Shown here one piece after another: positions 1,029 through 15,236 of a stretch of 64,000 nucleotides of DNA. Position 1 is the first letter of the stretch, and every line of letters starts with the position of its first letter. Under the pieces are notes generated by a model, which saw nothing but the letters and a program-made list of their open reading frames with translations, had not been told where the DNA came from and did no database searches. The stretch covers positions 124,001-188,000 of IMG/VR virus record IMGVR_UViG_3300023257_000007. The stretch is one strand, 5' to 3'. The translations under genes and the position numbers were made by a program.

Positions 1029-1433
1029 TTAAAATAATTCTTTTTCTAATTCTTTCATACATTGAATAACACCAAATTTGGTACCTTCCAATATAAAATC
1101 ATATAAAGAAAATATATTATTACTCTTTGGTGAATCATCAAACCAATTATTATCATTACAAATATCATCAACATCACTTTGATATTTCAAATAAAAATTA
1201 AAAATATCTCCATTCTCAACAAAATCTTGTAATTTACCTGGTTCTGGGTCATTAATGTAATCTCTGATAAAATTTTGAACATTAACCAATTCAGTTGTAT
1301 TATCAACTGAATTATCTAATAAATCTAATACTCCTCTCTTTAAAGAAATATATTGTTCGGTTAGTTTATCTTTAAGAGTATCTTCAAGATTCTCTTTTAT
1401 CATTTTTGAATATTCTTCTGTAAATTTTTTCAT
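1029..1433 (-). CDS. Hypothetical protein (weak leader MKKFTEEYSKMIKE)
   Basis: 134-aa ORF; TATATA lies 5 nt before the ATG. Confidence 0.7.
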   Translation of the reverse strand: MKKFTEEYSKMIKENLEDTLKDKLTEQYISLKRGVLDLLDNSVDNTTELVNVQNFIRDYINDPEPGKLQDFVENGDIFNFYLKYQSDVDDICNDNNWFDDSPKSNNIFSLYDFILEGTKFGVIQCMKELEKELF

Positions 1434-1456: not shown

Positions 1457-2401
1457 TTAAAAATCTGATGCATTTAATAATGTGTATTGATAAATACCAC
1501 CTTCCAATTTAGTTCGATATTTTTCACATAAAGACATAAATCTTTGAAAATCAGACCAATAATGTATTACTTGACAACCTGCAGACCATGATTTAACACC
1601 ACTCCCTGGTGATGATTTTTCGGTACCTACCTTAGTAGAATGTATATTAATACCTCCACCTTCACTACTATTAATATTATAATGAAAAGTTCCGTTTTTT
1701 GTAGGATCTCTATGAACTGGTAAATTATAAGTAGGGTTCAACGCTCTATATCTAGCAGAATTAGTTTGTTTATGATATCCAAGTTTATATGTAAATTGTC
1801 CCTCTTTTAAAATTGAACAACCTTTAGAATTTAATAATTTTTTAAGGTAATAAACTCCAGGTTTTGTAGTACATTCAAATTCTTCAACAATATCATCATA
1901 TACAACTAGCATAGTATCATTCCAATTATTCGGTTTATCAGCGTTTCTAACTCCTATTAATTGAAAAGGTTCAATCCATTTGTATTTTTTTAGTTTAAAA
2001 ATTCGTTTAAGTTGACTAACCGTAATATTTGAAGGTTTTGGTGTTGTGTTTGCTGGATTAGAACTACCATTATTTGAAGTTGATATATTTGTTTGACCAC
2101 CTTGACCTATTGATGAATCTAATTGTTTAGTAGGTGTATAAGTTCCCCATTCAGGGTTATTATATATAACATCTGATTCTCCAAAAGTATCTCCATCTAC
2201 ATACGGATCATAACTATCATCATCGGCATTAATATTACTAGAATATTGATTCATTTCAGAATAAGTAAACTCATTTGCGTCACCATATGAACCAGAATCT
2301 TCAAAATCATCAACACCACTATAAGGATCATATTCTTCTTTTATCACAGTCTCCTGTTTTTGTGTTATTGGCTTTGTTTCATCATATTTAGGTATAGCCA
2401 T
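1457..2401 (-). CDS. Putative YkuD/L,D-transpeptidase-fold cell-wall enzyme, tail-associated lysin candidate
   Basis: Acidic, low-complexity N-terminus; C-domain has INIH-x18-SAGCQV, a His...Cys pair like the YkuD HxnSxGC motif. Start overlaps the stop of the gp5-like gene (TAATG). Confidence 0.55.
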   Translation of the reverse strand: MAIPKYDETKPITQKQETVIKEEYDPYSGVDDFEDSGSYGDANEFTYSEMNQYSSNINADDDSYDPYVDGDTFGESDVIYNNPEWGTYTPTKQLDSSIGQGGQTNISTSNNGSSNPANTTPKPSNITVSQLKRIFKLKKYKWIEPFQLIGVRNADKPNNWNDTMLVVYDDIVEEFECTTKPGVYYLKKLLNSKGCSILKEGQFTYKLGYHKQTNSARYRALNPTYNLPVHRDPTKNGTFHYNINSSEGGGINIHSTKVGTEKSSPGSGVKSWSAGCQVIHYWSDFQRFMSLCEKYRTKLEGGIYQYTLLNASDF

Positions 2402-3564
2402 TATTTATATCTTATAAATTTTTTAGTTTTCTTATCAAAAATTGCAATTTTTCCATCTTCTGTTTCTCTATATATAATATCCTTTTTAGTACCAGAAGTT
2501 GGTATCGTTTTTATTATTTTAGGTTCTAAACCACTTGATTTTTTAACATTTAATTTCTTAAAATCTTTATATTGTGCGTATTCAGATTCATCTGTTTCAA
2601 TTGTCTCACCATCAACAACTTTAATATATGTTATATATTCAGTTCCGTCTTCGTTTTGACTAACAAAAGGAGCGTCATCTATAATAAATTTTGATGGTTG
2701 TGATTCTACTTCTTTATCTACAGCCTTTTCTCTTTCTTCATTAACTTTTTCTTTAAAATCTTTTGAAACATATTCAGATTTTAAAAGTTTTTTAGGTTTT
2801 GGTTCATTAAATTTATCAGTTAAATCAATTGTAAGATCATCATCATCTTTAATAACAGACGTTTCAGGTGATCTTTTCAATTTCTTAATTTTATTATCAT
2901 CATTCAAGAAAACATTATCAGAAACAAAAGTTTCTCTGATTACTTTATATTCCATTAACAACATATCTAACTCTGGTCTAATAATAGGGGCCGCTAAATT
3001 TCCTGTTAATGTTGTAGGAACCAATAATTTATTGATAAATTTATCCATCCACGCAAAAAAATTAGTTCCTAAAACAGCTTCTTGATCTGCAGTTTTATCA
3101 CCTAAATTTATTTTCTGTGAATTATCTTTTAATTCAATATTAATAGAATTATTATCTATTCTAATTTTATTATATTTATGATCTATTATAAATTCATCAC
3201 CATTTGTATATACCTGAGAAGTTTCATCAAATAATAAAGCCACAAAATTCAAATAATCATCTTCACTTAAACTCTTTAATTTTCTTTCAAGATTTATATT
3301 GTAATTCTCACTATAAATATAATGAGGATCATATATATCATCATTTAGAAAAATAACATTCACTATTTTACCAATAGCAGGAACCTCAAAAGATTTTCCA
3401 GCTAACCCCCTATATGGGGAAGAATATGGCAAATCTTCCATTGGTATAGTATCAAAAACACCTTGTACCCTAACTTTAAGTCTACCTTTTCTATTAGGAT
3501 CTTTATTATCTTCTACAATACCTACAAATATTTTATCTCTAATATCAACATTAATTTGTTGCAT
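2401..3564 (-). CDS. Baseplate hub/spike protein with gp5-like N-terminal OB domain
   Basis: GIVEDNKDPNRKGRLKVRVQGVF...FEVPAIGKIVNVIF is the Gp5/VgrG OB-fold signature; no lysozyme domain follows. Confidence 0.8.
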   Translation of the reverse strand: MQQINVDIRDKIFVGIVEDNKDPNRKGRLKVRVQGVFDTIPMEDLPYSSPYRGLAGKSFEVPAIGKIVNVIFLNDDIYDPHYIYSENYNINLERKLKSLSEDDYLNFVALLFDETSQVYTNGDEFIIDHKYNKIRIDNNSINIELKDNSQKINLGDKTADQEAVLGTNFFAWMDKFINKLLVPTTLTGNLAAPIIRPELDMLLMEYKVIRETFVSDNVFLNDDNKIKKLKRSPETSVIKDDDDLTIDLTDKFNEPKPKKLLKSEYVSKDFKEKVNEEREKAVDKEVESQPSKFIIDDAPFVSQNEDGTEYITYIKVVDGETIETDESEYAQYKDFKKLNVKKSSGLEPKIIKTIPTSGTKKDIIYRETEDGKIAIFDKKTKKFIRYK

Positions 3565-3579
3565 ATAATTCTTTTAATT

Positions 3580-5220
3580 TTATAAAATTCCAGAAAGACC
3601 AAGAAGATCGATTGTTTCACCTACAGTTGGAACAACATCTAAAAATTCATCTTCTATGTCTCCACTTAAATCTCCAATTAAATCTCCAATAACATTTTGT
3701 AGTGTTAGATCATAATAATCTTCAGCATAAACATTATTAGGATAAATTTCTGGAATACCAGTAACATCTCTAACTTGATAGACAACTTCTCTTAATAAAT
3801 CTCCCCTGAAACCTCTCAATTTATTCATAACATCACCTTTAAAATCTTGAACATTTTCATTCAATGTATTACTCAATGTTTCTAAAAATGTTGGTTGATT
3901 ATTAACAACATCTTCCCATTCAGTAGGTGCAGCATTTATAATCCAAGATTCAGTTCTATCCTTAGTACTAAATGACTTATTAACTTTTCTTTCAACTGCT
4001 TCTTTTCTAATTTGTTCAACAGATTTCTTATATCTACTAAATTCAAAGTCAGTTGAAGCCATAGATGAATCCGTCATATTTCTTATTCTATCACCCGATC
4101 GTATACGCTTACTGTAAAGTATATCCTGTGTAATCATCAATGGATTAAATAATCTTTCAACAGATTTATAATAAATATCAAATTTTAAATTCGCAGATGT
4201 AGTATTTAAAGTTGAATCAAACCCAGCCATTGATAAATCAGAACCATGTATTTGTGATTTCTCAAAATCAAAATTACAATCACGTAATATATAATATTGT
4301 GATGAAACTTCTGGATTTATTTCATAAGAACCAGTAGAATCATTCCATTTTTTAAAACTTCTAAGATCTGTTATTCTGATTACCATGTCAAATCTTAATA
4401 AATTTTCAGGAAACATATACTTTTGTAATCTATAATCATAATTTAAATTATTATATAATTCAGCTAAATATAAAGCAATCATTGTAACATCTTCATTTAA
4501 ATCAAATGTTATTTTATCTTCTTTATATTTTACAATCTTTGCATTTAACTTATCTAAACCATTAATATTCTTAATATAATAAGGTCTATTTCTATCTCTC
4601 TTTTTATTTAAAAATACATCTCCTTCTAAATTAAATAATTGACCAAGTGTTGCAATAAATTTATTATATAATATTTCTCTAACCTTAACATCTGGTATTT
4701 CAGAATATTGTGTAATAAAAGATTTTAACGATTTAGCATCTAATAAACTTGATTTTTGTGATATAAACAAATCAAAACCTAAAAATGTAGGATCTTCGTA
4801 CTTTAAAAAATCAAAATTTTTCGAAAAATCAGATAAACCATATTTAAATGTGTCTTCATCATAATTAAACATAGACTGAGTTCTTCTTGGACCATCATCA
4901 GGTATTAAAGGATTATAAACATTACCTATATTTATATTACCAGTATTGCTAGTATTTAATGAATCAGAATTAGTAGAATTAGGATTATTACCAGCATCAG
5001 TGTTTGAATTTGGGTTTGATGTAGAATTTAATTCTTTTTCAGTCCACGCAGCACCCTCATTTTTTCTAACATCAATTTCCTCAGCTAATTTTTTAGCCGC
5101 ATTAGATGACATATCTTTAGATTCTTTTAATAATGTAGAATCTTTTAATGATTTAACACTAGCTAAATCTTCTGCTACTTTTGTAGGATCTATTTTTGAA
5201 ATTTCATCTAAATAACCCAT
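3580..5220 (-). CDS. Putative baseplate/tail structural protein
   Basis: 546-aa ORF inside the baseplate operon, with beta-rich central segments (EDPTFLGFDLF, LKFDIYYKSV). Confidence 0.45.
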   Translation of the reverse strand: MGYLDEISKIDPTKVAEDLASVKSLKDSTLLKESKDMSSNAAKKLAEEIDVRKNEGAAWTEKELNSTSNPNSNTDAGNNPNSTNSDSLNTSNTGNINIGNVYNPLIPDDGPRRTQSMFNYDEDTFKYGLSDFSKNFDFLKYEDPTFLGFDLFISQKSSLLDAKSLKSFITQYSEIPDVKVREILYNKFIATLGQLFNLEGDVFLNKKRDRNRPYYIKNINGLDKLNAKIVKYKEDKITFDLNEDVTMIALYLAELYNNLNYDYRLQKYMFPENLLRFDMVIRITDLRSFKKWNDSTGSYEINPEVSSQYYILRDCNFDFEKSQIHGSDLSMAGFDSTLNTTSANLKFDIYYKSVERLFNPLMITQDILYSKRIRSGDRIRNMTDSSMASTDFEFSRYKKSVEQIRKEAVERKVNKSFSTKDRTESWIINAAPTEWEDVVNNQPTFLETLSNTLNENVQDFKGDVMNKLRGFRGDLLREVVYQVRDVTGIPEIYPNNVYAEDYYDLTLQNVIGDLIGDLSGDIEDEFLDVVPTVGETIDLLGLSGIL

Positions 5221-5228
5221 ATCTTATT

Positions 5229-6596
5229 CTATTTTTTTGAAGTGTTTGGAGTATACTCCTCATTTAAACTTCTCTTTGCTAATGTTATTTCTTGAACATT
5301 ACCATCTTTCTTTGAAAATGTGTAACTAATGCCAATTATTATCCATTCCCCTGACAATCTTTTATTAATTTTTGCATCATCAACTTTAGGATTTTTTTCA
5401 GTTGTTACAGCATCTTGATTAAAACCAACATCATCTAATTGTCCTAATGAATATAACTCAAGTAAAACTTTTTGAAATCTATTTAAACTAAAATTAGGTC
5501 TAGTTAATGTTATTAACATATTAGTTTTTTGTAACATTAACATATTATAACTATTCTGTTGATCTGCAAATAAATAATTTTCATGCATATTATCAATATC
5601 CAATTTCCCTAAATATCTACCAGATACAGGTGATAATTGTGAATATTTATCTTTATCATTCTCTTTAATAACTTTTAAATGAAAAAATTTATAACTATTT
5701 TTTAATTTATCATACCATCTAATATACCTTGAATAACCCTCTTTTAAATGAAAAGATGTTTTCTCATCTAACAAATTAAATTTATCAATATAAGTATTAG
5801 TATCATTATAATCTGGATGATTTGTTAATTTTAATTTTGTTATATTATCTTCTTCTTTAGTAGATGATGTTGTATAAGCAGACTCATTACCAACATTTTG
5901 AACTGTTGATATATCGGCTTTTAATTCTATTTCAACATTAACAAAACAAAAATTATAATAAAAATCAATATAACTAGATAAAAAACTCGAATCATTTTTA
6001 AAAGATTTAATTGTTATTTCTTTCATATAATACATTGTATAATCTGCTGGATTTAACCATGTCATTTCATCTTGAGTACCATCTATATTTGTTGCAAATC
6101 CTAATTGTGATTCTTCAGATATTTTTTTTAATATAGAATAACTAGTACCTTTATCAGATCTAAATTCTGTATTATATAAAGTATCTACATTTAATTCACC
6201 TTCTAAATAATATATTAATTTTTGATTTTCTTTTCCAACTGGTTTAGTTGGATTAAAAACTGTTATCTTAAAATCCATTCTAACTGGCATAGAAGATTCA
6301 TTTTGTGCTCTTATAAAAATACTAATTAAATCATTATCAAGTGGATAAATATCACCAAATAATTTATTACTTTTATCATTAAACTTCATTTCTAATTTAG
6401 GTAAAAAATCGTCATTTGTTAATGTTAAATATAATATGTCATCCGATTCTATACTTAATCCTTTATAATATACCAATGGATATTTACCAACATTATCACC
6501 ATAATAATCTTTTTCACTATCCTTTGCATCAGTTCTATAATCATATTCAATATCAACTAATTGTAATTTACTTCTATTTATAATTTCTAATGACAT
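5229..6596 (-). CDS. Baseplate hub protein (gp27/phage late control D-like)
   Basis: C-terminal LSGEWIIIGISYTFS...QEITLAKR is typical of gp27/GpD hubs; lies between gp53-like and gp5-like genes. Confidence 0.6.
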   Translation of the reverse strand: MSLEIINRSKLQLVDIEYDYRTDAKDSEKDYYGDNVGKYPLVYYKGLSIESDDILYLTLTNDDFLPKLEMKFNDKSNKLFGDIYPLDNDLISIFIRAQNESSMPVRMDFKITVFNPTKPVGKENQKLIYYLEGELNVDTLYNTEFRSDKGTSYSILKKISEESQLGFATNIDGTQDEMTWLNPADYTMYYMKEITIKSFKNDSSFLSSYIDFYYNFCFVNVEIELKADISTVQNVGNESAYTTSSTKEEDNITKLKLTNHPDYNDTNTYIDKFNLLDEKTSFHLKEGYSRYIRWYDKLKNSYKFFHLKVIKENDKDKYSQLSPVSGRYLGKLDIDNMHENYLFADQQNSYNMLMLQKTNMLITLTRPNFSLNRFQKVLLELYSLGQLDDVGFNQDAVTTEKNPKVDDAKINKRLSGEWIIIGISYTFSKKDGNVQEITLAKRSLNEEYTPNTSKK

Positions 6597-6597
6597 A

Positions 6598-7044
6598 TTA
6601 TTCTAATTTGTTTGTTATTCTAATTCTACCCGCTTTCTTATCATTTGTAACCTGACTTAATCCTTTAGGTTTCATAGTTGGAGATAACTTAGGAGTACCG
6701 TCTGGTTTCTTTTCTTGAAATTTTGTCAATTTATCAAAAGCAGAATCATCATCTTTTCCACCATGTAATATCATAAGATTTTCAGGAGAAAAATATAAGA
6801 TTTCATCACCTTCTTTAATATTCCATGGATTATAAATATTATTAACAACCATTAATTCTTCAATAAAATCCGTGTGAGTATATAAATAATCACATATTAA
6901 ATCGAGTCTCATTTCATGTTCAGGCAATACAACATAAACATAAAAATTCTGTTCTATATCATAAATAACAGTTGTTCCGAAAATATCATATAAACCATTA
7001 CTTGTTCTTTTAAAACCATCTAAATCATCTAAAGAATATAACAT
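6598..7044 (-). CDS. Baseplate wedge protein, gp53/LysM-like
   Basis: HEMRLDLICDYLY...ELMVVNNIYNPWNIKEGDEILY matches the gp53 'R.D.IS...YG....W.I...N.I.NP' pattern. Confidence 0.7.
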   Translation of the reverse strand: MLYSLDDLDGFKRTSNGLYDIFGTTVIYDIEQNFYVYVVLPEHEMRLDLICDYLYTHTDFIEELMVVNNIYNPWNIKEGDEILYFSPENLMILHGGKDDDSAFDKLTKFQEKKPDGTPKLSPTMKPKGLSQVTNDKKAGRIRITNKLE

Positions 7045-7073
7045 ATTAAAATTTAATTTTTAAACATCACCAT

Positions 7074-8711
7074 CTATGGTAAATACTTTTTAGTAAATTC
7101 ATCAGTTTTTTGAGGATTTGTATTAAAATCCACTTGCCATGTTTCTGAACCCGATTCACCACCTGCAGCAACATTTGAAGGGTTAGTAACATCACCAACA
7201 ATAGAACCAACCTTATAAATTCTCTTATATCCATTATTAAAATATGTCATTATTTCCTGTGCACCCATATTTCTACCCAATCTACAATCTATTTTAACAC
7301 CAATATTAATTGGAGAATCATTAAAAGATAATTGGTTTGCAAAATCAATATTAACTTTATCAACAACTATATTGTTAATTGATAATATAGGCATATATGG
7401 ATTACCAACTGTTATATGCCATGGTGTTGAAGGTAAACCTGTCATAACAGATACAGACCCTCTTAAAGGCCATTTATATTTATTTAATGTACTTGCTAAT
7501 AAACTACCAAGAAGACCATTTGCATTAATACTATCAACCCTTTTTACTGCATCCAGACCACTTTTCTTCACTTGAATTAACACATCATCAGATGTTAAAC
7601 CTACTTCATCATTTTTTTCTTCTGTGATAGTACCAGTTACTGAACCAATCACCTCTTTAACTATTTTAATAATAGCTAATACAAAAGCTCTTACCAATGT
7701 TTTAATAAACCCTAACCATGCATCAACAGAACCACTATTTGTAGCAGCTAATAATTTTTTTATAACAGAACTATTAGAATTAGATAAAACATATCTAACA
7801 TCTGATGTACCCATTTTTAATAAATTATCAATTATATCATTCATTGCAATACCTGGATCAATATTATTAATATATTTTTGTTCATAAGATGTTTCTAAAG
7901 AAATATCTAAATTAGATACTAAACCAAATGAATTTGCATCACGAGTAGCACCTTCTTGTAAAACGTTAGGATTACCAAAAGGTATTTCTTGAGAATCAAA
8001 TCCACCAGATGATTTTCCACCTTCTTCTTTATTTCTTTCTGTCATACCCATAGCCTTTAAAAACCCAAACAATAAACCTTGTGACCAACCAGGTATAGGT
8101 ATAGATTTACCAGCATCAAAATCAAATTCATTTGATAATACTTCACCTAATATTTCATGTACCATTTTTGTTTCTGTTATCCATTTCTCATTAAAAGATA
8201 AATTAAATAACTTTTCATCACCATCTTTAACCCATCCAATAACAGTAGATATAGGTTTTTTGGCATTTTCGGACATTTTCGGCCAATTATTTAAATTAGT
8301 AGGAACAATAGTACCTTCTCTATACCTTCTCAAAATTACTAATCTATTTATAGGATAAACACCTAAATCTTTTAAATATACAAAATCGGCTGCTTTTAAT
8401 TTCATAGCATTATTGTCTTTGAAATATTCAATTAATTTTAGATACGGGTTAGCACCTGTATTAGGTTTACTGAAAGAATTAATATTTATCCTATTTGAGA
8501 TAGCTTTTGTACCAGCCAATTTAGCACTAGTGCCTTTAGTTGGTTTATATACATTAACTCTCTCACCACTATCAGATTTTTTATATAAATCACCTGAAAC
8601 CCAGCCTGATCCCGGGTTATCATATATACTACCTTTATTATCCTTATTATTAAATTGGGATGGATCTAATGAAAATAAAAACTTTAATTCTGTTCCATGA
8701 CTTCTAAACAT
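7074..8711 (-). CDS. Putative baseplate/tail-tube cap protein (gp48/gp54-like)
   Basis: First gene of the baseplate operon; tube-fold-like C-terminus (PWHITVGNP...IVVDKVNIDF...PINIGVKIDCR); late-type promoter upstream. Confidence 0.4.
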   Translation of the reverse strand: MFRSHGTELKFLFSLDPSQFNNKDNKGSIYDNPGSGWVSGDLYKKSDSGERVNVYKPTKGTSAKLAGTKAISNRININSFSKPNTGANPYLKLIEYFKDNNAMKLKAADFVYLKDLGVYPINRLVILRRYREGTIVPTNLNNWPKMSENAKKPISTVIGWVKDGDEKLFNLSFNEKWITETKMVHEILGEVLSNEFDFDAGKSIPIPGWSQGLLFGFLKAMGMTERNKEEGGKSSGGFDSQEIPFGNPNVLQEGATRDANSFGLVSNLDISLETSYEQKYINNIDPGIAMNDIIDNLLKMGTSDVRYVLSNSNSSVIKKLLAATNSGSVDAWLGFIKTLVRAFVLAIIKIVKEVIGSVTGTITEEKNDEVGLTSDDVLIQVKKSGLDAVKRVDSINANGLLGSLLASTLNKYKWPLRGSVSVMTGLPSTPWHITVGNPYMPILSINNIVVDKVNIDFANQLSFNDSPINIGVKIDCRLGRNMGAQEIMTYFNNGYKRIYKVGSIVGDVTNPSNVAAGGESGSETWQVDFNTNPQKTDEFTKKYLP

Positions 8712-8730
8712 TATTTGATATAAATTTTAA

Positions 8731-8742
8731 TTATATATTAAA
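8731..8742 (-). promoter_or_regulatory. Candidate late promoter TTTAATATATAA for the baseplate operon
   Basis: The same TT[AT][AT]TATATA motif precedes most structural and leader-bearing genes (for example near 21250, 24082, 25502, 31388, 33297, 39418, 51195, 55680, 56553, 60835). Confidence 0.6.
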
Positions 8743-8771
8743 ATAATTAAACTGAAACAAAAAGAAAAAAA

Positions 8772-9185
8772 TTAATAATCTCTTATAATCTGTGAAGTAT
8801 CAAAATTATGAAGCTCACCTAAGATTTCTTCCTGTGTTTCAGAATCATCTTGAAAATCTTCATATAAATATAAAGATCCAAACTCAACTGGGAACTCAAA
8901 AATGTTCTTTATCTTAAATAAATCTGCAATATTTAATTCGGGATTTTCAAAATTTGGAATGTAATATATATCTTTTTTCTTTCTTAAAGAATGAACAATT
9001 TTAGTGTATACCAATAAATTGAAGTAATCTCTATATTTTTTAATAGTAAAATCAGGGCCTTCTTCATCTTTTAACTGATCTATTTGTTGTTTTATATCTA
9101 TAATAACTTTGTTCCTAATTCGATTTACTTTCACGTATTTATCAAATTTCTTTCTGTTCTTGCAAAATACTATATAAAATTTCAT
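8772..9185 (-). CDS. Hypothetical protein
   Basis: 137-aa ORF with a TATATA motif upstream. Confidence 0.65.
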   Translation of the reverse strand: MKFYIVFCKNRKKFDKYVKVNRIRNKVIIDIKQQIDQLKDEEGPDFTIKKYRDYFNLLVYTKIVHSLRKKKDIYYIPNFENPELNIADLFKIKNIFEFPVEFGSLYLYEDFQDDSETQEEILGELHNFDTSQIIRDY

Positions 9186-9365: not shown

Positions 9366-10610
9366 ATGGCTAAAAGTACAGGAAAATTTGACTTTTCCAA
9401 ATTAACAAGCGTAGTTGAAGATATTTCAAAAAAGACCGCTATTATGATTGAAAAAGATAATAAACAAACATCTTTTATTGATACTGGTATTTATACTTTC
9501 AATGCACTACTTTCTAAAAATATTCGAACTGGCGGTATTTCAAAGAATAGAATTACCGTATTAGCTGGACCCCCACAATGTGGTAAATCTTATTTATGTT
9601 ATAATATTGCTAGAAATGCTCAAAAAGAAGGATATAATATTATTTATATTGATACTGAATTTTCAATTGAAAAACATGAAATGGAAAAATTCGGTATAAA
9701 TATTAGCGAAGATAGATTAATGTTAATAAGATCAAATAAAGTAGAAGATCTTAAAATAATGTTAACGCAACTTCTAGATAATCTTAAAACACAAAAACAA
9801 GATGGTGTTGATATAGGAAAAACAATCATATTCCTAGATTCAATTGGTCAATTAGCATCCAATAAAGAAGTAGAAGATGCTTTAGGCGGTAAAATTAAAG
9901 TTGATATGTCTAGAGCAAAAGCTATCAAATCTCTCCTTAGAATTATTAATAGTGATCTTGGATATTTAGATATTCCATTAGTAGCTACTAACCATGTTTA
10001 TATGACACAAGATTTATATCCAGTTGCTGTAATGGGCGGTGGTGAAGGAATCACATATACTGCATCTACTGTAGTTTATATGAGTATAGCTAAACTTAAA
10101 ACAGGTGAAGAAAATAAAGATTATAAAATGTATGTGTCTGATATTGGGCAATCTGGTGTTATAGTAACTGCAAAATCTAGAAAGAATAGATTAGCAAAAC
10201 CAATGAAAATTAAATTCGAAATTAATCATAACGAAGGAACAAATCCTTATAGAGGACTTGAAGTATTTTGTACTCCAGAAAACTTTGATAAAGTTGGTAT
10301 TGCAAAAGTTAAAAAAGTAGAATCAGGTCGAGGTAAAGCTAAGACAATAGAATATCAAGCTGGTGGTACTAAATATTACGTTAAACATTTAGATCAAAGT
10401 TTTTATGAAAAATCATTATTTAATGGTAAAATTTTCACTGATGAAGTAATTACTGCTCTTGAACCAATCGTTCAAACATACTTTGAATATTCATCATATG
10501 ATGAACAACAGAAAATCATGGATAATTTGGACTCTGAACACGCAAAATTTGAATCAGATACTGATTTTGATATTGATGGTGATAATGATGGGCAACTTTT
10601 TGATAAATAA
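9366..10610 (+). CDS. uvsX: RecA/UvsX-family recombinase
   Basis: Walker A GPPQCGKS, YIDTE, Walker B IIFLDSIG, 'MSRAKAIKSLLR', TNHVY, MGGGEG. Confidence 0.92.
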   Translation: MAKSTGKFDFSKLTSVVEDISKKTAIMIEKDNKQTSFIDTGIYTFNALLSKNIRTGGISKNRITVLAGPPQCGKSYLCYNIARNAQKEGYNIIYIDTEFSIEKHEMEKFGINISEDRLMLIRSNKVEDLKIMLTQLLDNLKTQKQDGVDIGKTIIFLDSIGQLASNKEVEDALGGKIKVDMSRAKAIKSLLRIINSDLGYLDIPLVATNHVYMTQDLYPVAVMGGGEGITYTASTVVYMSIAKLKTGEENKDYKMYVSDIGQSGVIVTAKSRKNRLAKPMKIKFEINHNEGTNPYRGLEVFCTPENFDKVGIAKVKKVESGRGKAKTIEYQAGGTKYYVKHLDQSFYEKSLFNGKIFTDEVITALEPIVQTYFEYSSYDEQQKIMDNLDSEHAKFESDTDFDIDGDNDGQLFDK

Positions 10611-10642
10611 AAAATAGATAAATTACAAAATAAATTTTTTAA

Positions 10643-11980
10643 ATGAGTAAAGAAACCCTAAACACAGGAATGGAAAAAGTATTCTTCCATTATATATTAG
10701 AAAACCCTAACCAGTTTTCTAATGTAGAACCGTATTTTTTCAGAAATGAAAATATACAATTTATCTACACTATTCTCAGAGATAACTATCTAAATAGTAA
10801 AAAGAAAATTGTACCAACACCACAACAAATCTTTGCAATGACAAAATTGCACGATCCCAATGGTAAGATATCCGACAATTTAATTAAAATGTTACTTAAA
10901 GGAGATAATAGTCAATATGAAAATGATTGGTTAGACCCTAGATTTAAAGCCTGGAAAATTTCTAATCTTGTTAAAAATAATGTTATGAAATCAATTGACT
11001 TTGTCAGAGGAATTGATGATGTAAACTATGATAATGTTGTCGAAGTTGCATCAAAAATTAATCAAATGTTTAACGAAGTTCAACTTATTGATACAGACGA
11101 AGATGATCTCGGAGATGATTTCGATGATCCAGAATCACATAAACAAGATTTTAATAAACATAAAATATCTACAGGTTGGAATTGTTTAGACAATATGATG
11201 AATGGTGGATGGGATTATGCATCACTTATTGTTCTATTAGGTGAAACCAATGTTGGTAAATCTATGTGGCTAAATAATATAGCAGTTAATATAGCAAACC
11301 AAGGTAAAAATGTTGTTTTTGTAACTTTAGAAATGGCTTCACATAAATGTATGAAGAGAATGGGATCAATGAGATTAAAAATTCCAGTTGATAGTTATGA
11401 TGAAAAATCAAAAGATTCAATCTTCATGAAAAATAAAATAAATCAACTTAAATCGAGTAACGGTGGTGTTTTTAATTCAACATCAGGCAAAATATATGTT
11501 AAAAAATTCCCAACAGGTGCTTGTACAGTTACAGATTTAGACAATTATATAACAAAATTAGAACAAGTAAAAAAAATTAAAATTGATGCAGTTTTAGTTG
11601 ATTATATTAATATTATGGGAATTGAAAAAGGTCTCGACTTCGCTAATATGCTTTTCCTTAAAGGTAAACATTTAGCTGAAGGTTTAAGATATCTTGCTGA
11701 CAAACATAACGTAGCATTAATTACAGCAACACAAACTAATAAATCAGTATGGGGCGCTTCGGATATTTCTCTTAGAGATATTCCAGAATCAAAAGCAGTA
11801 GCAGAAACTGCTGATGCAGTGTGGGCAATCATTAGAAACAGTGAAATGAAAAGACAAAATAAATATAGACTCAAAGTTTTAAAACTTAGAGATGGTGAAT
11901 ATAAAGATGAACAAATAAGATATGATTTTAACACTACTTTTCTTTCTATGGAAAATGATGAATTTGTCGGTACTACCTAA
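10643..11980 (+). CDS. gp41: Replicative DnaB-like helicase (T4 gp41-like)
   Basis: STGW..LD, Walker A GETNVGKS, FVTLEM, LVDYIN, TATQTN, ESKAVAETAD, KLRDG. Confidence 0.92.
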   Translation: MSKETLNTGMEKVFFHYILENPNQFSNVEPYFFRNENIQFIYTILRDNYLNSKKKIVPTPQQIFAMTKLHDPNGKISDNLIKMLLKGDNSQYENDWLDPRFKAWKISNLVKNNVMKSIDFVRGIDDVNYDNVVEVASKINQMFNEVQLIDTDEDDLGDDFDDPESHKQDFNKHKISTGWNCLDNMMNGGWDYASLIVLLGETNVGKSMWLNNIAVNIANQGKNVVFVTLEMASHKCMKRMGSMRLKIPVDSYDEKSKDSIFMKNKINQLKSSNGGVFNSTSGKIYVKKFPTGACTVTDLDNYITKLEQVKKIKIDAVLVDYINIMGIEKGLDFANMLFLKGKHLAEGLRYLADKHNVALITATQTNKSVWGASDISLRDIPESKAVAETADAVWAIIRNSEMKRQNKYRLKVLKLRDGEYKDEQIRYDFNTTFLSMENDEFVGTT

Positions 11981-12007
11981 AAATTTAGGTTAAAATATCA
12001 CAAATAT

Positions 12008-12694
12008 ATGGCTAAAAAGAAATCTGAAATTAATAATTTAGATGATATTTTTGATGGATTTGAGAAAGAAATAATAAATACAGAATCAGATGCAGAATCA
12101 GAATCAGAACTAGATACAGAATCAGAATCAGAATCAGATATAGAACTAGATGATGAATTTGTAAAAGAGGAAGAAGATGATTTTGAAATTAGATTTAAAT
12201 CCATTCAAAATAAACATAAATCTGAAGGTAAACACAGTCTTAATAGAGACACAATATTTAACGGTAAATTAGAAGAAAAAGTTGAAGATGAACAATATTT
12301 AACCGATGTGGATTACTATGATGTAAATCCAGCAAAAATTGAACAAGGTACTCAATTTGAATTTGAATCAAAATTCAATGAAGATTATATTAACCTTAAA
12401 GAACTAGAAAAAGATGTCTATGATCTACTATCAGAAAATACAAAACTAGATTTTACTGCTAATAGAAGAAAACCAAATAGACAAACCTTTAATTCGTACT
12501 ACCAAATGTTACTTAACGAACTTAAATATAAATATACTAAAAGTGAAATTTTTGTAACATTATCGTTTTACTTTACCGATAATATATTTAACATGTTTAA
12601 ACTTTTAGATAAAAAACATGCAACAATAATTATCATTGAATTAAAAAACAAAGGATACCTCGAAGATATTATAGGGGACTTTGATTTTCAATAA
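12008..12694 (+). CDS. Acidic hypothetical protein; C-terminus possibly like the gp33 late-transcription coactivator
   Basis: 228 aa with ESESE repeats (gaatca tandem); C-terminal KLLDKKHATIIIIELKNKGYL aligns by eye to gp33 'KLISK......I..EA..LNFL'. Confidence 0.3.
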   Translation: MAKKKSEINNLDDIFDGFEKEIINTESDAESESELDTESESESDIELDDEFVKEEEDDFEIRFKSIQNKHKSEGKHSLNRDTIFNGKLEEKVEDEQYLTDVDYYDVNPAKIEQGTQFEFESKFNEDYINLKELEKDVYDLLSENTKLDFTANRRKPNRQTFNSYYQMLLNELKYKYTKSEIFVTLSFYFTDNIFNMFKLLDKKHATIIIIELKNKGYLEDIIGDFDFQ

Positions 12695-12710
12695 AAAATT
12701 AAACTAATAT

Positions 12711-15236
12711 ATGAATTTTTATGACAGAAACACAGTCTATGAATCTACATTAAAATATTTTAAAGGTGATCAACTCTCAGCTAATGTATGGATTAATAAA
12801 TACGCACTCAAAGACTCAAATGGAAATATATATGAACTTACACCAGATGATATGCATAAAAGATTATCTAAAGAATTACATAGAATAGAATCCAAATATA
12901 TAAACCCAATATCAGAAGAAGAAATATATGATCTTATCAAAGATTTTAAATATATAGTTCCACAAGGTGGTTCAATGTCAGGGATAGGAAATAATTTACA
13001 AACTGTTTCACTTAGCAATTGTTTCGTTGTTGGAAATGAAGCAGATTCATATGGTGGAATATTTATGGCGGATCAAGAACAAGCACAACTTATGAAAAGA
13101 AGAGGAGGAGTTGGTCACGATATGTCTCACATTAGACCAAAAGGTTTTCCTGTTAAAAATTCAGCATTATCATCAACAGGTATAGTTCCATTTATGGAAA
13201 GATATTCAAATACAACAAGAGAAGTTGCACAAGATGGTAGAAGAGGTGCTCTTATGTTATCATGTTCAATAAAACATCCAGATATTGAAGAATTTATAGA
13301 TGCTAAAATGGAACAAGGTAAAGTTACAGGTGCAAACGTATCTGTTAAAATTACCGACGACTTTATGAAAGCCGCTTTAGAAGATAGTGTATTTTTTCAA
13401 CAATATCCAATTGTTAGTGATAATCCAGTTATCGCAAAAGAAGTAAATGCTAAAAACATTTGGGATAAAATTGTGCATAATGCTTGGAAAAGTGCTGAAC
13501 CTGGTATAATGTTTTGGGATACTATGATTAATGAATCTATTCCAGATTGCTACTCAGATTTAGGCTATAAAACAGTATCAACAAATCCATGTGGTGAGAT
13601 CCCTTTATGTCCGTATGATTCTTGTAGATTACTAGCTATTAATCTTTATTCTTATGTTAAAGATCCTTTCACCAAAAATGCTAAATTTAACTATGAATTA
13701 TTTGGCGAACATGTAATAATCGCACAAAGATTTATGGATGATATTATCGATCTAGAAATAGAAAAAATTGATAGTATACTTAAAAAAATTAAAAGTGATC
13801 CAGAAAATCAATTAATCAAACAAGTAGAAATAGATCTTTGGAAAAAGATACAACATAAAGCTAAAGAAGGTAGAAGAACAGGATTAGGCGTAACAGCCGA
13901 AGGTGATATGTTAGCAGCTCTCAATATTAAATATGGTACTAAAAAAGGAACCGAATTTTCAGCAAAAATACACAAATTATTAGCTATCGAAGCATATACA
14001 TCATCTTGTATCATGGCTGAAGAAAGAGGCGCTTTTGAGATATATGATTTTGATAGAGAAAAGAACAATCCTCTTATTAAAAGATTATTTGAAGCAAAAC
14101 CAGAACTTGAAGAACTACACAAAAAACATGGTAGAAGAAATATTGCATTATTAACTATTGCACCAACTGGAACAGTATCTCTAATGACACAAACAACATC
14201 AGGAATTGAACCGGTATTTCAGTTATATTATAAAAGAAATAGAAAAGTAAATCCTAATGACAAAGATTCTAGAGTTGATTTTGTAGATGAAATAGGTGAT
14301 GCATGGGAATCATATAATGTATTTCATCCAAAATTCTTCAAATGGCTTAAAATTAATGATTACAATATTGAAAAAGTTAAGTTGATGTCAAATAATGATA
14401 TTGCTGTAGTAATTGAAAAAACACCTTGGGCTGGTGCAACATCAGCCGATGTAGATTGGCTTGAAAAAGTTAAAATGCAAGGAGAAATTCAAAAATGGGT
14501 TGATCATTCTATTAGTGTAACAGTTAATTTACCTAAAGAAGTAACAGAAGAAATGGTTTCTAAAGTATATGAAGAAGCATGGAAATCTGGTTGTAAAGGT
14601 ATAACAGTTTATAGAGAAGGTTCTAGGAGTGGTGTATTAGTTTCAACAAATGATGATGAAAAGAAAACACTTGAACAAATTATTAAAGAAAACAATGCTC
14701 CTCGAAGACCAAAAAATATGGAATGTGATATTCTTAGATTCCAAAACAAAGGCGAAAAATGGATCGGTTTTGTAGGTTTATTAGAAGGACAACCTTATGA
14801 AATATTTACTGGTATTATTGATTCTTTCAATATTCCAACATATGTAGAAAAAGGTGTGGTTAGAAAAATGAGAGATGAAAATGGTAAATCTAGATATGAT
14901 TTTGTATATGAAGATAAAGATGGATATGAAGTTATTATGACTGGTTTAAGTAGAGCCTTCAATAGAGAATATTGGAATACAGGTAAATTCATCTCTGCTA
15001 TTTTAAGACACGGTATGCCATTACCAAATGTAATTGCTTTAATGGACTCAATTAGTTTAGATGGTGATTATATAGGAACTTGGAAATCAGGTGTTAAGAG
15101 AATGCTTAAAAAATACATTAAAGATAATACAACAATATCAGCAGTTTGTCCAGAATGTGGACAAGATACATTAGTATTTAATAGTGGTTGTGTACAATGC
15201 ACAAACCCAGAATGTGTTTATTCAAAATGTGAATAA
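12711..15236 (+). CDS. nrdJ: Class II (adenosylcobalamin-dependent) ribonucleotide reductase, Bacteroidota type
   Basis: SNCFV, TNPCGEIPL, IAPTGT, GCKGITVYREGSR and a C-terminal CPECG...CVQC zinc ribbon; N-terminus 'KYFKGD.L.A.VWINKYALKD' resembles Bacteroidales NrdJ. Confidence 0.9.
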   Translation: MNFYDRNTVYESTLKYFKGDQLSANVWINKYALKDSNGNIYELTPDDMHKRLSKELHRIESKYINPISEEEIYDLIKDFKYIVPQGGSMSGIGNNLQTVSLSNCFVVGNEADSYGGIFMADQEQAQLMKRRGGVGHDMSHIRPKGFPVKNSALSSTGIVPFMERYSNTTREVAQDGRRGALMLSCSIKHPDIEEFIDAKMEQGKVTGANVSVKITDDFMKAALEDSVFFQQYPIVSDNPVIAKEVNAKNIWDKIVHNAWKSAEPGIMFWDTMINESIPDCYSDLGYKTVSTNPCGEIPLCPYDSCRLLAINLYSYVKDPFTKNAKFNYELFGEHVIIAQRFMDDIIDLEIEKIDSILKKIKSDPENQLIKQVEIDLWKKIQHKAKEGRRTGLGVTAEGDMLAALNIKYGTKKGTEFSAKIHKLLAIEAYTSSCIMAEERGAFEIYDFDREKNNPLIKRLFEAKPELEELHKKHGRRNIALLTIAPTGTVSLMTQTTSGIEPVFQLYYKRNRKVNPNDKDSRVDFVDEIGDAWESYNVFHPKFFKWLKINDYNIEKVKLMSNNDIAVVIEKTPWAGATSADVDWLEKVKMQGEIQKWVDHSISVTVNLPKEVTEEMVSKVYEEAWKSGCKGITVYREGSRSGVLVSTNDDEKKTLEQIIKENNAPRRPKNMECDILRFQNKGEKWIGFVGLLEGQPYEIFTGIIDSFNIPTYVEKGVVRKMRDENGKSRYDFVYEDKDGYEVIMTGLSRAFNREYWNTGKFISAILRHGMPLPNVIALMDSISLDGDYIGTWKSGVKRMLKKYIKDNTTISAVCPECGQDTLVFNSGCVQCTNPECVYSKCE

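What the first reader, a model, noticed from the sequence alone, without database searches (positions are those of the whole stretch)
1457..3564. gp5 spike lacks its lysozyme; a coupled YkuD-like Cys/His enzyme sits in its place
Seen: the gp5-like ORF has the OB domain but no lysozyme motif. The next ORF overlaps it by 1 nt (TAATG) and has a disordered linker plus an H-x18-SAGC domain. Known: YkuD L,D-transpeptidase folds use a Cys-His pair on peptidoglycan stem peptides, and T4 gp5 uses a muramidase. Inference: a tail-associated L,D-peptidase-type lysin replaces the lysozyme.
Basis: partly seen in the sequence, partly recalled or inferred. Interest (0 to 1): 0.62.

Follow-up and report, generated by a model that had tools for sequence, protein, structure and literature searches.

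The report
Huge-phage tail spike with detachable YkuD-fold lysin
In this very large phage, the gene for the tail's puncturing spike is followed by a tightly coupled gene for a cysteine/histidine cell-wall peptidase with an L,D-transpeptidase (YkuD) fold. Related phages fuse the same or other wall-cutting enzymes directly onto the spike, so this is very probably the enzyme the tail uses to open the host wall.

Summary
On the minus strand, a 387-aa spike protein (2401-3564) has an OB domain and no lysozyme. It overlaps by one base (TAATG) a 314-aa ORF (1457-2401) that has an acidic low-complexity N-terminus and an H254-x18-S-A-G-C276 motif.

The C-terminal domain (aa 125-314) has no Pfam, NCBIfam or PDB sequence match. 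Its AlphaFold model matches only YkuD-fold enzymes: the top 20 PDB representatives score Z 6.6-10.0, and the next scores 3.5. His254, Ser273 and Cys276 are invariant in 147 diverse relatives. The family has at least 4,123 clusters, mostly ~200-aa phage proteins.

Comparative genomics supports a tail role.
- Of 119 spike homologues, most long forms are spike-lysin fusions: VanY, M23, GH19, muramidase, lysozyme, SLT.
- Two of them fuse this same YkuD-like domain. The two window ORFs map collinearly onto one of those two (P0195).
- Three of three short spikes examined are followed by a separate lysin gene.
- A 74%-identical relative keeps the junction and the N-terminal adaptor but carries an M15 peptidase instead.

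Virion presence, bond specificity and His/Cys geometry remain untested. I rate it a new variant of a known kind (tail-associated lysins).

The parts
2401..3564 (-). Central tail spike protein (387 aa, P0003), gpV/gp5/VgrG type, without any hydrolase domain
   Evidence: Pfam Phage_base_V E 5.5e-6. phrog_430 and phrog_37871. AF2 model pLDDT 83.5. Best fold matches are the phage P1 baseplate spike 9vzk_q (Z 12.5), eCIS/VgrG spikes, R2 pyocin spike, P2 gpV, and the T4 gp5 OB domain at 28-30% identity.
3325..3525 (-). OB-fold domain of the spike (aa 14-80)
   Evidence: Pfam PF04717 aa 14-80. Strands E13-19, E29-33, E47-50, E67-72.
2887..3564 (-). Conserved spike core (aa 1-226), shared with 119 homologues
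   Evidence: 46-87% identity to P0125-P0243 over aa 1-230. 55% identity to the spike of 735-kb phage LR756501. Fold matches span aa 2-226.
2404..2886 (-). Lys/Glu-rich C-terminal tail of the spike (aa 227-387). Aa 227-291 correspond to the start of the linker in fused homologues. Aa ~295-385 are predicted as a small alpha/beta domain found at similar protein length (387-396 aa) only in the closest relatives.
   Evidence: P0003 aa 8-291 align to P0195 aa 13-288. Secondary structure and pLDDT 78-94 for aa 270-350. P0125-P0127 have similar length. Function unknown; a docking role is inference only.
2399..2403 (-). TAATG stop/start overlap (1 nt) coupling spike and lysin
   Evidence: Read directly. 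The identical junction is kept in relative L009. A similar junction occurs in L099, and gaps are 5 nt or less in L098, L100 and L007.
1457..2401 (-). Spike-coupled lysin ORF (314 aa, P0002; stop at 1457-1459)
   Evidence: phrog_3000 E 1.9e-23 and phrog_33083 'endolysin' E 1.1e-13 on aa 151-312.
2135..2401 (-). Acidic N-terminal adaptor (aa 1-89) with motifs MAIPKY, DPY (twice) and P-E-W-G-T-Y-T
   Evidence: 38% identical (E 5e-12) to aa 1-78 of the L009 lysin P0394, which carries a different catalytic domain. DPY and P-x-Y-G-S-Y motifs precede the same catalytic domain in the fused spikes P0186 and P0195. Acidic composition is shared by all six separate lysins examined.
2030..2134 (-). Ser/Asn/Thr/Pro-rich flexible linker (aa 90-124)
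   Evidence: Composition read. Outside the family HMM match, which starts at aa 125.
1460..2029 (-). YkuD-fold Cys/His catalytic domain (aa 125-314)
   Evidence: Family HMM aa 125-314, E 4.7e-60. AF2 pLDDT 85.1, pTM 0.84. VIA-align top 20 are all YkuD-fold, Z 6.6-10.0. Foldseek top hits are YkuD and LDTs.
1640..1642 (-). Codon of His254, predicted general base
   Evidence: Invariant in 147/147. End of strand E114-116 of the model.
1574..1585 (-). S273-A274-G275-C276; Cys276 (1574-1576) is the predicted nucleophile
   Evidence: Ser and Cys are 147/147, Gly 141/147, Ala 136/147. hhalign places kwSAGCQV on rvSHGCvrl of bona fide YkuD domains. The alignment is local and not significant (E 0.15).
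3580..9185 (-). Upstream syntenic tail/baseplate module: ORFs of 546, 455, 148, 545 and 137 aa
   Evidence: The same gene order and similar sizes precede the spike in LR756501, L009, L010 and L099/L100. Only weak PHROG tail hits: phrog_15542 and phrog_7145 for the 148-aa ORF. Individual roles not determined.

Best explanation
ORF 2401-3564 encodes the trimeric central spike of a contractile tail. ORF 1457-2401 encodes a tail-associated peptidoglycan peptidase that is the detached equivalent of the lysin domain fused to the spike's C-terminus in related huge phages.

Shown:
- the spike fold;
- the YkuD fold of aa 125-314;
- an invariant His/Ser-x-Gly-Cys motif;
- fusion of the same domain to homologous spikes;
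- collinearity of the two ORFs with one fused protein;
- a lysin (fused or downstream) next to the spike throughout the group;
- exchange of the catalytic domain behind a conserved N-terminal adaptor.

Inferred:
- The TAATG overlap gives coupled, roughly equimolar synthesis.
- The acidic N-terminal ~90 aa dock the enzyme on the spike or baseplate hub, so it is packaged at the tail tip.
- After sheath contraction drives the spike through the outer membrane, the domain reaches the murein on its flexible linker.
- Cys276, activated by His254, attacks the carbonyl of the L-centre of meso-DAP (the L,D bond to D-Ala4, or a 3-3 cross-link). This forms a thioester, which water resolves. Stem peptides or cross-links are cut locally and the tube can pass.

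Stand-alone ~200-aa members of the same family in crAss-like, Bacteroides and P2-like phages probably act as ordinary endolysins.
For: Fold. VIA-align gives 20/20 best PDB representatives as YkuD-fold (Z 6.6-10.0), then a gap to Z 3.5. Foldseek's list is also led by YkuD/LDTs.

Motif. H254-x18-SAGC276 is invariant in 147 members and fits HXX14-17-(S/T)HGCh (PMC9638812).

Peptidoglycan context. phrog_33083 'endolysin'. Family members are fused to Amidase_2 and to a pesticin/lysozyme-like domain. PG_binding_1 fusions occur.

Tail association.
- P0186 (aa 451-648, E 9e-34) and P0195 (aa 442-649, E 2.5e-28) are spike-YkuD-like fusions.
- P0195 sits in the same syntenic slot.
- P0003 aa 8-291 align to P0195 aa 13-288, and P0002 aa 77-313 align to P0195 aa 395-648.

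Generality. Of 119 spike homologues, 31 have VanY, 17 M23, 4 GH19+DUF5675 and 2 muramidase. 7 of 10 sampled from the 17 remaining long forms hit PHROG endolysin families. Short spikes are followed by separate M23, VanY or Amidase_2 genes. LR756501 has an M15-like lysin after its spike.

Cassette swap. In L009 the spike is 74% identical, the gene after the lysin is 75% identical and the junction is the same. The adaptor is 38% identical, but the catalytic domain is Peptidase_M15_4 / phrog_17001.
Against: There is no experimental or proteomic evidence that the protein is in virions.

Sequence profiles do not place the domain in YkuD. Pfam PF03734 and PF10908 give no hit at E<=1. hhalign against seven YkuD domains gives only a 13-column, non-significant match.

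Foldseek E-values are weak (about 1e-2, TM about 0.4).

His-Cys distance was not measured.

The canonical second His of S-H-G-C is Ala here, and the residue after Cys is Gln rather than hydrophobic.

Most family members are free-standing ~200-aa proteins at lysis-like positions, so an endolysin role for this one is not excluded.

The complex prediction of spike tail with adaptor gave no answer.

The closest structural matches (Csd6, Pgp2, Bd1075) are L,D-carboxypeptidases, which trim stems rather than open the mesh.
Confidence: 0.7

Rival explanations
1. It is simply the phage's holin-dependent endolysin, made late, accumulating in the cytoplasm and not packaged. Its position after the spike gene reflects late-operon organisation only.
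For: Stand-alone ~200-aa homologues lie beside terminase and small ORFs in crAss-like phages. In P2/HP1-like Pseudoalteromonas phage ACA1 the homologue lies between the tube and chaperone genes, which from my memory is the slot of the HP1 lysis genes. phrog_33083 is labelled endolysin. No lysozyme, Amidase_2 or SLT gene was found in the 345 kb held, so another endolysin is not evident apart from one M23 gene.
Against: The same domain is covalently fused to homologous spikes. A lysin is linked to the spike throughout the group, whatever its type. The ~124-aa acidic adaptor/linker is absent from stand-alone family members (consensus) and is shared with a different lysin in L009. The genome is only about 48% complete by CheckV, so the real endolysin may lie elsewhere. 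Dual use is possible.
Confidence: 0.15
2. The enzyme is delivered by the tail but is not a mesh-opening lysin. It acts like DpaA (cutting outer-membrane protein-murein tethers), or like Tlde1/LD-carboxypeptidases or transpeptidases that remodel stem peptides, for example to loosen the envelope or block superinfection.
For: The best structural neighbours are L,D-carboxypeptidases Csd6, Pgp2 and Bd1075 (Z 9.4-10.0), DpaA (Z 8.3) and Tlde1a (Z 6.6). YkuD enzymes show transpeptidase, carboxypeptidase and endopeptidase activities (PMC12729407). Tlde1a is a spike-delivered YkuD-type effector (PMC9638812).
Against: The slot is otherwise filled by bona fide murein hydrolases: M23, VanY/M15, GH19, muramidase, lysozyme, Amidase_2. 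That argues for functional equivalence as a wall-opening enzyme. Z-scores among YkuD subfamilies differ by less than 1-2 and cannot assign specificity.
Confidence: 0.1
3. The two ORFs are expressed as one polypeptide by a programmed -1 frameshift near the TAATG, or the split is an assembly error. Either would recreate the fused spike-lysin.
For: ORF2 is in the -1 frame relative to ORF1. The A-rich stretch ACT AAA AAA TTT lies 7 codons before the stop. The fused homologues are of similar total length.
Against: The -1 frame has a TAA two codons before the ATG. That leaves only the last codon before the stop for a slip, with no X XXY YYZ heptamer there. The identical split occurs on 4 contigs carrying P0003, on a second 348-kb IMG/VR contig and in the 74%-identical L009 with the same junction. 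Homologues P0125-P0127 keep the 387-396 aa length. So it is not an assembly artefact.
Confidence: 0.03

Closest known systems
YkuD-fold L,D-transpeptidase superfamily (B. subtilis YkuD, M. tuberculosis LdtMt2, H. pylori Csd6, C. jejuni Pgp2, Bdellovibrio Bd1075, E. coli DpaA)
   Same: Same overall fold (Z 8-10, 105-123 aligned residues, rmsd about 3 A). Same order of His-strand, loop, S-x-G-Cys strand, helix, strand. Spacing compatible with HXX14-17-(S/T)HGCh.
   Different: Not detected by the Pfam YkuD HMM or by profile-profile comparison. 11-18% identity. Ala replaces the second His of SHGC and Gln follows the Cys. Extra invariant His210 and Arg231. Encoded almost only by phages and prophages. 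Presumably hydrolytic rather than cross-linking.
Tlde1 (PF10908), T6SS L,D-carboxypeptidase/transpeptidase effector of Salmonella (PMC9638812)
   Same: An altered YkuD fold carried by a contractile-injection spike into the periplasm of a Gram-negative target. The split-versus-fused forms here parallel 'cargo' versus 'evolved VgrG' effectors. It is the nearest named cluster in the ESM Atlas feature search (0.78, weak).
   Different: No PF10908 hit and lower structural score (Z 6.6). No adjacent immunity gene identified. It serves phage entry, not bacterial competition.
T4 gp5 tail lysozyme and other virion-associated peptidoglycan hydrolases
   Same: An OB-fold spike at the baseplate centre associated with a murein-degrading enzyme. 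The T4 gp5 OB domain matches at 28-30% identity.
   Different: In T4 the lysozyme is inserted between the OB domain and a C-terminal beta-helix of one polypeptide. Here the enzyme is C-terminal or a separate gene, is a Cys/His peptidase rather than a muramidase, and is exchangeable among at least eight enzyme types within one phage group.
P2 gpV / phage P1 / Mu gp45 / R-pyocin central spikes
   Same: Best fold matches of the spike core (Z 6.7-12.5). These spikes also lack a lysozyme.
   Different: Those spikes end at the apex domain. This one has a 160-aa Lys/Glu-rich C-terminal extension and a coupled lysin gene.
Catalogued YkuD-type phage lytic proteins (PhaLP class 'YkuD', 10 entries; PMC8310338)
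   Same: Precedent that YkuD-type domains occur in phage lytic proteins.
   Different: Those are recognised by PF03734, cd16913 or PF10908. The present family (at least 4,123 clusters at 50% identity) is invisible to these models and is filed as PHROG 3000, 'unknown function'.

Membership tests
YkuD / L,D-transpeptidase catalytic-domain superfamily | YkuD beta-sandwich fold | tested here: met
   AF2 model pLDDT 85. All 20 best PDB representatives are YkuD-fold, Z 6.6-10.0, and the next is Z 3.5. The Foldseek list is also led by YkuD/LDTs, though E is about 1e-2.
YkuD / L,D-transpeptidase catalytic-domain superfamily | Catalytic motif H-X(2)-X(14-17)-[S/T]-H-G-C-h with invariant His and Cys | tested here: met
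   H254-ST-x16-S-A-G-C276-Q. His, Ser and Cys are invariant in 147/147. Deviations: Ala for the second His (2 of 147 have His) and Gln after Cys. Most family members have a spacer 4 residues shorter.
YkuD / L,D-transpeptidase catalytic-domain superfamily | Sequence-profile membership (Pfam PF03734 above cut-off) | tested here: not met
   No hit at E<=1 for the protein or the whole genome. hhalign against 7 YkuD domains gives only 13 columns on the Cys motif, E 0.15. hhalign against DpaA and LdtB singly gives nothing.
YkuD / L,D-transpeptidase catalytic-domain superfamily | His and Cys side chains juxtaposed as a dyad | not testable with these tools
   Model coordinates are not returned. Only secondary-structure order and motif spacing support it.
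YkuD / L,D-transpeptidase catalytic-domain superfamily | Cleavage or transfer at the L,D (meso-DAP to D-Ala) bond of murein stems | not testable with these tools
   Needs enzymology.
Tlde1_dom (PF10908) | Profile match and Tlde1-type capping subdomain | tested here: not met
   No PF10908 hit. Structural Z is only 6.6 to 7uma. ESM Atlas similarity 0.78 is below the trust level.
PHROG 3000 / 33083 (phage proteins; the latter labelled endolysin) | Profile match over the domain | tested here: met
   phrog_3000 E 1.9e-23 (aa 151-312) and phrog_33083 E 1.1e-13.
T4 gp5-type tail lysozyme | N-terminal OB domain | tested here: met
   PF04717. T4 gp5 chains match aa ~1-95 at 28-30% identity.
T4 gp5-type tail lysozyme | Internal T4-lysozyme-like (PF00959) domain | tested here: not met
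   No PF00959 hit in the spike or anywhere in the 345-kb record. No lysozyme among the fold matches.
gpV/VgrG-type central spike (Phage_base_V) | OB domain followed by spike/beta-helical region, in the baseplate gene neighbourhood | tested here: met
   Z 12.5 to the P1 spike over aa 7-152. VgrG, Afp8/Pvc8, R2 pyocin, P2 gpV and Mu gp45 all match. Conserved synteny.
Virion-associated peptidoglycan hydrolase (tail lysin) | Genetic or physical linkage to a tail structural protein | tested here: met
   1-nt overlap with the spike gene. The same domain is fused to homologous spikes. Lysins of other types are fused or adjacent in relatives.
Virion-associated peptidoglycan hydrolase (tail lysin) | Presence in the mature virion and role in entry | not testable with these tools
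   The phage is uncultured and no proteome is available. The complex prediction gave no answer.

The most novel reading that the evidence does not exclude
A very large, so far unannotated branch of the YkuD superfamily (at least 4,000 clusters; PHROG 3000; no Pfam) is a major class of Cys/His L,D-peptidase lysins of phages of Gram-negative bacteria, crAss-like phages included. In addition, the central spike of these huge phages is a plug-and-play delivery platform. A conserved acidic adaptor lets interchangeable wall-degrading 'cargo' enzymes ride on the spike, either fused or non-covalently. This would be the phage counterpart of evolved-VgrG versus cargo effectors of the type VI secretion system.
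Probability: 0.45. Interest if true: 0.65.

Novelty: new variant of a known kind. Interest (0 to 1): 0.55.

Why it matters
Tail-associated lysins are known, and YkuD domains are listed as a rare curiosity among phage lytic proteins (10 entries in PhaLP). Three things follow if this finding holds.

- It gives a probable function to a family of thousands of 'hypothetical' phage proteins, including genes of crAss-like gut phages. It also adds a thiol L,D-peptidase chemistry to the lysin repertoire, which matters for enzybiotic discovery against Gram-negative bacteria.
- It shows how the largest known phages equip their puncturing device. One slot after the spike core takes at least eight different wall-degrading domains, fused or detached, with clear cassette exchange between close relatives.
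- It draws a concrete parallel with T6SS effector loading (evolved VgrG versus cargo; Tlde1), which can be tested by pull-downs and cryo-EM.

Tried and rejected
- **Sequence searches of the domain.** Pfam, NCBIfam and PDB, both single sequence and 121-sequence profile, gave nothing meaningful.
- **Pfam HMMs on the genome.** PF03734 and PF10908 gave no hit.
- **Profile comparisons.** hhalign of the family against E. coli DpaA and LdtB singly gave nothing. Against an alignment of seven YkuD domains (E. coli plus three genomes) it gave only a short non-significant match on the Cys motif.
- **Complex prediction.** Spike aa 225-387 with lysin aa 1-140 returned 'no answer' (score 0.00). This is evidence neither for nor against binding. 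The tool noted that the partner's own fold was uncertain.
- **Programmed frameshift.** Considered and judged unlikely from the sequence.
- **Assembly error.** Rejected because the split recurs on independent contigs and in a diverged relative.
- **Weak T4_gp9_10_N hit.** The hit on aa 65-114 (E 0.0077, below cut-off) lies in low-complexity sequence, and I disregard it.
- **Literature.** Searches found no description of this family or of the spike-lysin slot in huge phages. The library is incomplete, so this is not proof of novelty.
- **Search limit.** The word search for spike homologues saw only proteins of 213-677 aa, so longer fusions are not counted.
Full report
**Setting.** The window is bases 209,476-273,475 of a 344,634-bp linear IMG/VR virus record that CheckV estimates as 48% complete. 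GC content is 25.3%. DNA of the first 8 kb is about 70% identical to metagenomic 'uncultured phage' records of 462-735 kb (LR756500-LR756504). So this is part of a huge phage. The rest of the window encodes replication and nucleotide-metabolism genes and no tRNA.

**Observation.** Both ORFs are on the minus strand.
- The spike ORF (2401-3564, 387 aa, P0003) has a Phage_base_V OB domain at aa 14-80 (E 5.5e-6). It matches PHROG baseplate-hub/spike families on its N-terminus only.
- Its stop (TAA, 2403-2401) shares one base with the ATG (2401-2399) of the next ORF (1457-2401, 314 aa, P0002), giving TAATG.
- An in-frame TAA two codons upstream fixes that start.
- P0002 begins with about 124 acidic, Ser/Asn-rich residues.
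- It contains His254, then 18 residues, then Ser-Ala-Gly-Cys276.

**The spike has no lysozyme.** No hydrolase family hits P0003. PF00959 finds nothing in the whole record. The AF2 model is confident (pLDDT 83.5). Aa 2-226 match central spikes:
- phage P1 baseplate spike (Z 12.5);
- cyanophage A-1(L);
- eCIS Afp8/Pvc8-type and T6SS VgrG spikes;
- R2 pyocin spike, P2 gpV and Mu gp45;
- the OB domain of T4 gp5 at 28-30% identity.

Nothing lysozyme-like appears. The last 160 residues are Lys/Glu-rich. A small alpha/beta domain is predicted around aa 295-345. Its fold was not searched separately.

**What the second protein is.** The C-terminal domain has no Pfam, NCBIfam or PDB sequence match. It does match phrog_3000 (unknown function, E 1.9e-23) and phrog_33083 ('endolysin', E 1.1e-13).

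A word-index search returned 247 relatives (best 120 listed), mostly about 200 aa and without annotation. A profile search of 1.84 billion representatives found 4,123 clusters at E<=1e-3, of which 1,116 are at E<=1e-30.

An AF2 model built on 121 homologues (pLDDT 85.1, pTM 0.84) was compared with 48,161 PDB representatives. The 20 best are all YkuD-fold enzymes:
- Csd6 (Z 10.0), Pgp2 (9.9), LdtMt5 (9.5), Bd1075 (9.4);
- LDTs of several species;
- DpaA (8.3), B. subtilis YkuD (8.2), Tlde1a (6.6).

Rank 21 falls to Z 3.5. Foldseek ranks B. subtilis YkuD first, and its list is almost entirely L,D-transpeptidases, though with weak E-values (about 1e-2, TM about 0.4). The ESM Atlas shape search finds only unannotated viral clusters and one PG_binding_1-containing cluster.

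In an alignment of 147 diverse members, His254, Ser273 and Cys276 are invariant. His210, Arg231, Gly275 and Gln277 are at least 92% conserved.

The motif fits the published L,D-transpeptidase signature HXX14-17-(S/T)HGCh (PMC9638812). It has 16 spacer residues, Ala for the second His, and Gln after Cys. In the model the order is strand (His), loop, S-x-G-Cys strand, helix, terminal strand. From my own knowledge, this is the order in YkuD.

Sequence profiles, however, do not connect the family to Pfam YkuD or Tlde1. My hhalign against seven bona fide YkuD domains aligned only 13 columns, non-significantly, although exactly on the S-x-G-C motif. I therefore call it a YkuD-fold Cys/His enzyme. 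It is probably a very divergent branch of the superfamily, but it is not a demonstrated Pfam-level member.

**Link to peptidoglycan.**
- Family members occur fused to Amidase_2 (P0272) and to a pesticin/lysozyme-like domain (P0321).
- One crAss-like homologue is annotated as carrying a peptidoglycan-binding domain.
- An Atlas cluster with the same shape carries PG_binding_1.
- Stand-alone copies sit next to the terminase in crAss-like phages.
- In P2/HP1-like Pseudoalteromonas phage ACA1 the copy sits between the tube and chaperone genes. From memory, that is where HP1 keeps its lysis genes.
- Copies in bacterial assemblies, probably prophage-borne, are mainly in Bacteroidota. They also occur in Pseudomonadota, Myxococcota and Desulfobacterota.

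**Link to the tail.** This is the decisive comparative evidence. The spike core (aa 1-230) has 119 listed homologues of 213-677 aa; the search is limited to that length range. My count from that table, with spot checks, is as follows:

| Class | Number |
|---|---|
| C-terminal VanY | 31 |
| M23 (one also with Phage_lysozyme, one with SLT) | 17 |
| GH19 plus DUF5675 | 4 |
| PF11860 muramidase | 2 |
| Long forms without a Pfam domain, carrying this YkuD-like domain | 2 |
| Other long forms without a Pfam domain | 17 |
| Short forms (261 aa or less) | 36 |
| Intermediate length | 10 |

- Of the 17 other long forms, 7 of the 10 tested hit PHROG endolysin families at their C-terminus.
- An HMM of the YkuD-like family finds the domain at the C-terminus of the two long spikes counted in that class. 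These are P0186 (aa 451-648, E 9e-34) and P0195 (aa 442-649, E 2.5e-28; carried on contigs up to 614 kb).
- P0195 occupies the same syntenic position as the window's two ORFs.
- P0003 aa 8-291 align to P0195 aa 13-288 (46% identity). P0002 aa 77-313 align to P0195 aa 395-648 (E 1e-11). So the two window ORFs are collinear with one fused spike-linker-lysin protein.
- All three short spikes I examined are followed at once by a separate lysin gene: M23 (385 aa), VanY (729 aa, 1-nt overlap) or Amidase_2 (360 aa).
- In the 735-kb phage LR756501 the spike is 55% identical. One base after it comes a 291-aa protein with an acidic N-terminus and an M15/LAS-type domain (phrog_894; HxxGxAxD and WxH motifs).

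**Cassette exchange.** In contig L009:
- the spike is 74% identical;
- the gene after the lysin is 75% identical;
- the TAATG junction is the same;
- the first ~89 residues of the lysin (MAIPKY..., two DPY motifs, P-x-W-G-T-Y-T) are 38% identical (E 5e-12);
- the catalytic domain is a Peptidase_M15_4 / phrog_17001 endolysin (E 1.2e-67) with no similarity to the YkuD-like domain.

DPY and P-x-Y-G-S-Y motifs also precede the YkuD-like domain in the fused spikes, and some VanY domains as well. All six detached lysins have acidic N-terminal regions. The N-terminal module thus behaves as a conserved adaptor or linker behind which catalytic domains are swapped.

**Mechanism proposed.**

Shown:
- the spike fold;
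- the YkuD fold;
- the invariant His/Cys motif;
- spike fusion in relatives;
- collinearity;
- slot conservation;
- domain swapping.

Inferred:
- coupled translation at TAATG;
- docking of the acidic adaptor on the spike or hub;
- packaging at the tail tip;
- release into the periplasm on contraction;
- thiol attack by Cys276 (with His254) on the L,D bond at meso-DAP, as in YkuD enzymes, which act as L,D-transpeptidases, carboxypeptidases or endopeptidases (PMC12729407, PMC9638812);
- hydrolysis of the acyl-enzyme, opening the wall locally.

Which bond is cut, and whether that suffices to open the mesh, is open. The nearest structures are carboxypeptidases, but the Z differences are too small to assign specificity.

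**Rivals.**
- An ordinary non-packaged endolysin. This is possible because most family members are free-standing, and because only one other wall enzyme was found in the held half of the genome. That enzyme is an M23 peptidase at G000:C1:282613-283497.
- A delivered but non-lytic remodelling or tether-cutting enzyme, like DpaA or Tlde1.
- A frameshift fusion or assembly artefact. This is unlikely. The -1 frame has a stop two codons before the ATG, and the split recurs on independent contigs and in diverged relatives.

**Comparison with the known.** Functionally this is a tail-associated murein hydrolase, like T4 gp5 lysozyme, but with three differences. The spike is gpV/VgrG-like. The enzyme is C-terminal or detached. 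The chemistry is Cys/His L,D-peptidase-like.

The closest conceptual parallel is the T6SS. There, peptidoglycan effectors are either fused to VgrG or ride as cargo, and Tlde1 is a YkuD-type effector (PMC9638812).

YkuD domains are catalogued in phage lytic proteins but are rare (10 in PhaLP; PMC8310338). The present family escapes those models. I found no paper describing it or the lysin slot of huge-phage spikes. The library is incomplete, so that is not proof of novelty.

**Verdict.** Novelty: a new variant of a known kind. Interest 0.55. Confidence in the tail-associated YkuD-fold lysin reading is 0.7. Nothing in this work called for a referred step.

Noticed in passing
G000:C1:282613-283497 (minus strand), about 9 kb beyond the window's right end: A second peptidoglycan peptidase gene in the same phage: a 295-aa frame with Peptidase_M23 (PF01551, E 7.7e-31). 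It could be the true endolysin or another virion enzyme.
   Followed up: partly
Proteins P0176, P0181, P0194, P0203 (spike homologues), aa ~290-420: DUF5675 (PF18925) sits between the spike core and a GH19 domain and has an I-R-I-H-x9-G-C-L-L-V-G motif. The ESM Atlas placed DUF5675 near the YkuD-like domain (0.76, weak). It may be another small His/Cys, Tlde1/YkuD-like peptidase domain.
   Followed up: no
L099:3312-6864: One relative has two tandem Phage_base_V spike genes (229 and 224 aa), followed with a 1-nt overlap by a 729-aa VanY lysin.
   Followed up: no
window 2404-2680 (spike aa ~295-387): The spike's C-terminal extension is predicted to fold into a small alpha/beta domain (pLDDT about 80-90 for aa 270-350). 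Only the closest relatives (P0125-P0127) share the 387-396 aa length; conservation of the domain itself was not checked. It is a candidate docking site for the detached lysin. Its fold was not searched on its own.
   Followed up: partly
window 1029-1433 (minus strand): The 134-aa helical ORF after the lysin is 75% identical in L009. It has no detectable counterpart after the fused spike of L010, and no family match. Its role is unknown (chaperone or tip protein?).
   Followed up: partly
window 56646-59909 (plus strand): A single 1,087-aa ORF combines GyrB-type (HATPase_c, DNA_gyraseB, Toprim) and GyrA-type (DNA_topoisoIV) domains: a fused type II topoisomerase.
   Followed up: no
window 42328-47805 and 47820-51170 (minus strand): Two adjacent giant ORFs (1,825 and 1,116 aa) have no Pfam match. 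The second hits only phrog_29329 (unknown function, E 7e-85).
   Followed up: partly
window 9366-15236 (plus strand); L010:1213-2154: A RecA-like ATPase, a DnaB-like helicase and the class I ribonucleotide reductase large subunit lie divergently next to the tail module. In relative L010 the RecA-like gene shows weak Hint/intein hits.
   Followed up: no
Loci L012-L091 (bacterial and a few archaeal MAG contigs): Stand-alone copies of the YkuD-like family occur in many Bacteroidota, Pseudomonadota, Myxococcota and Desulfobacterota assemblies. A few occur in bins labelled as archaea (Woesearchaeota, Nanoarchaeota, Nitrosopelagicus); these are probably mis-binned phage contigs.
   Followed up: no
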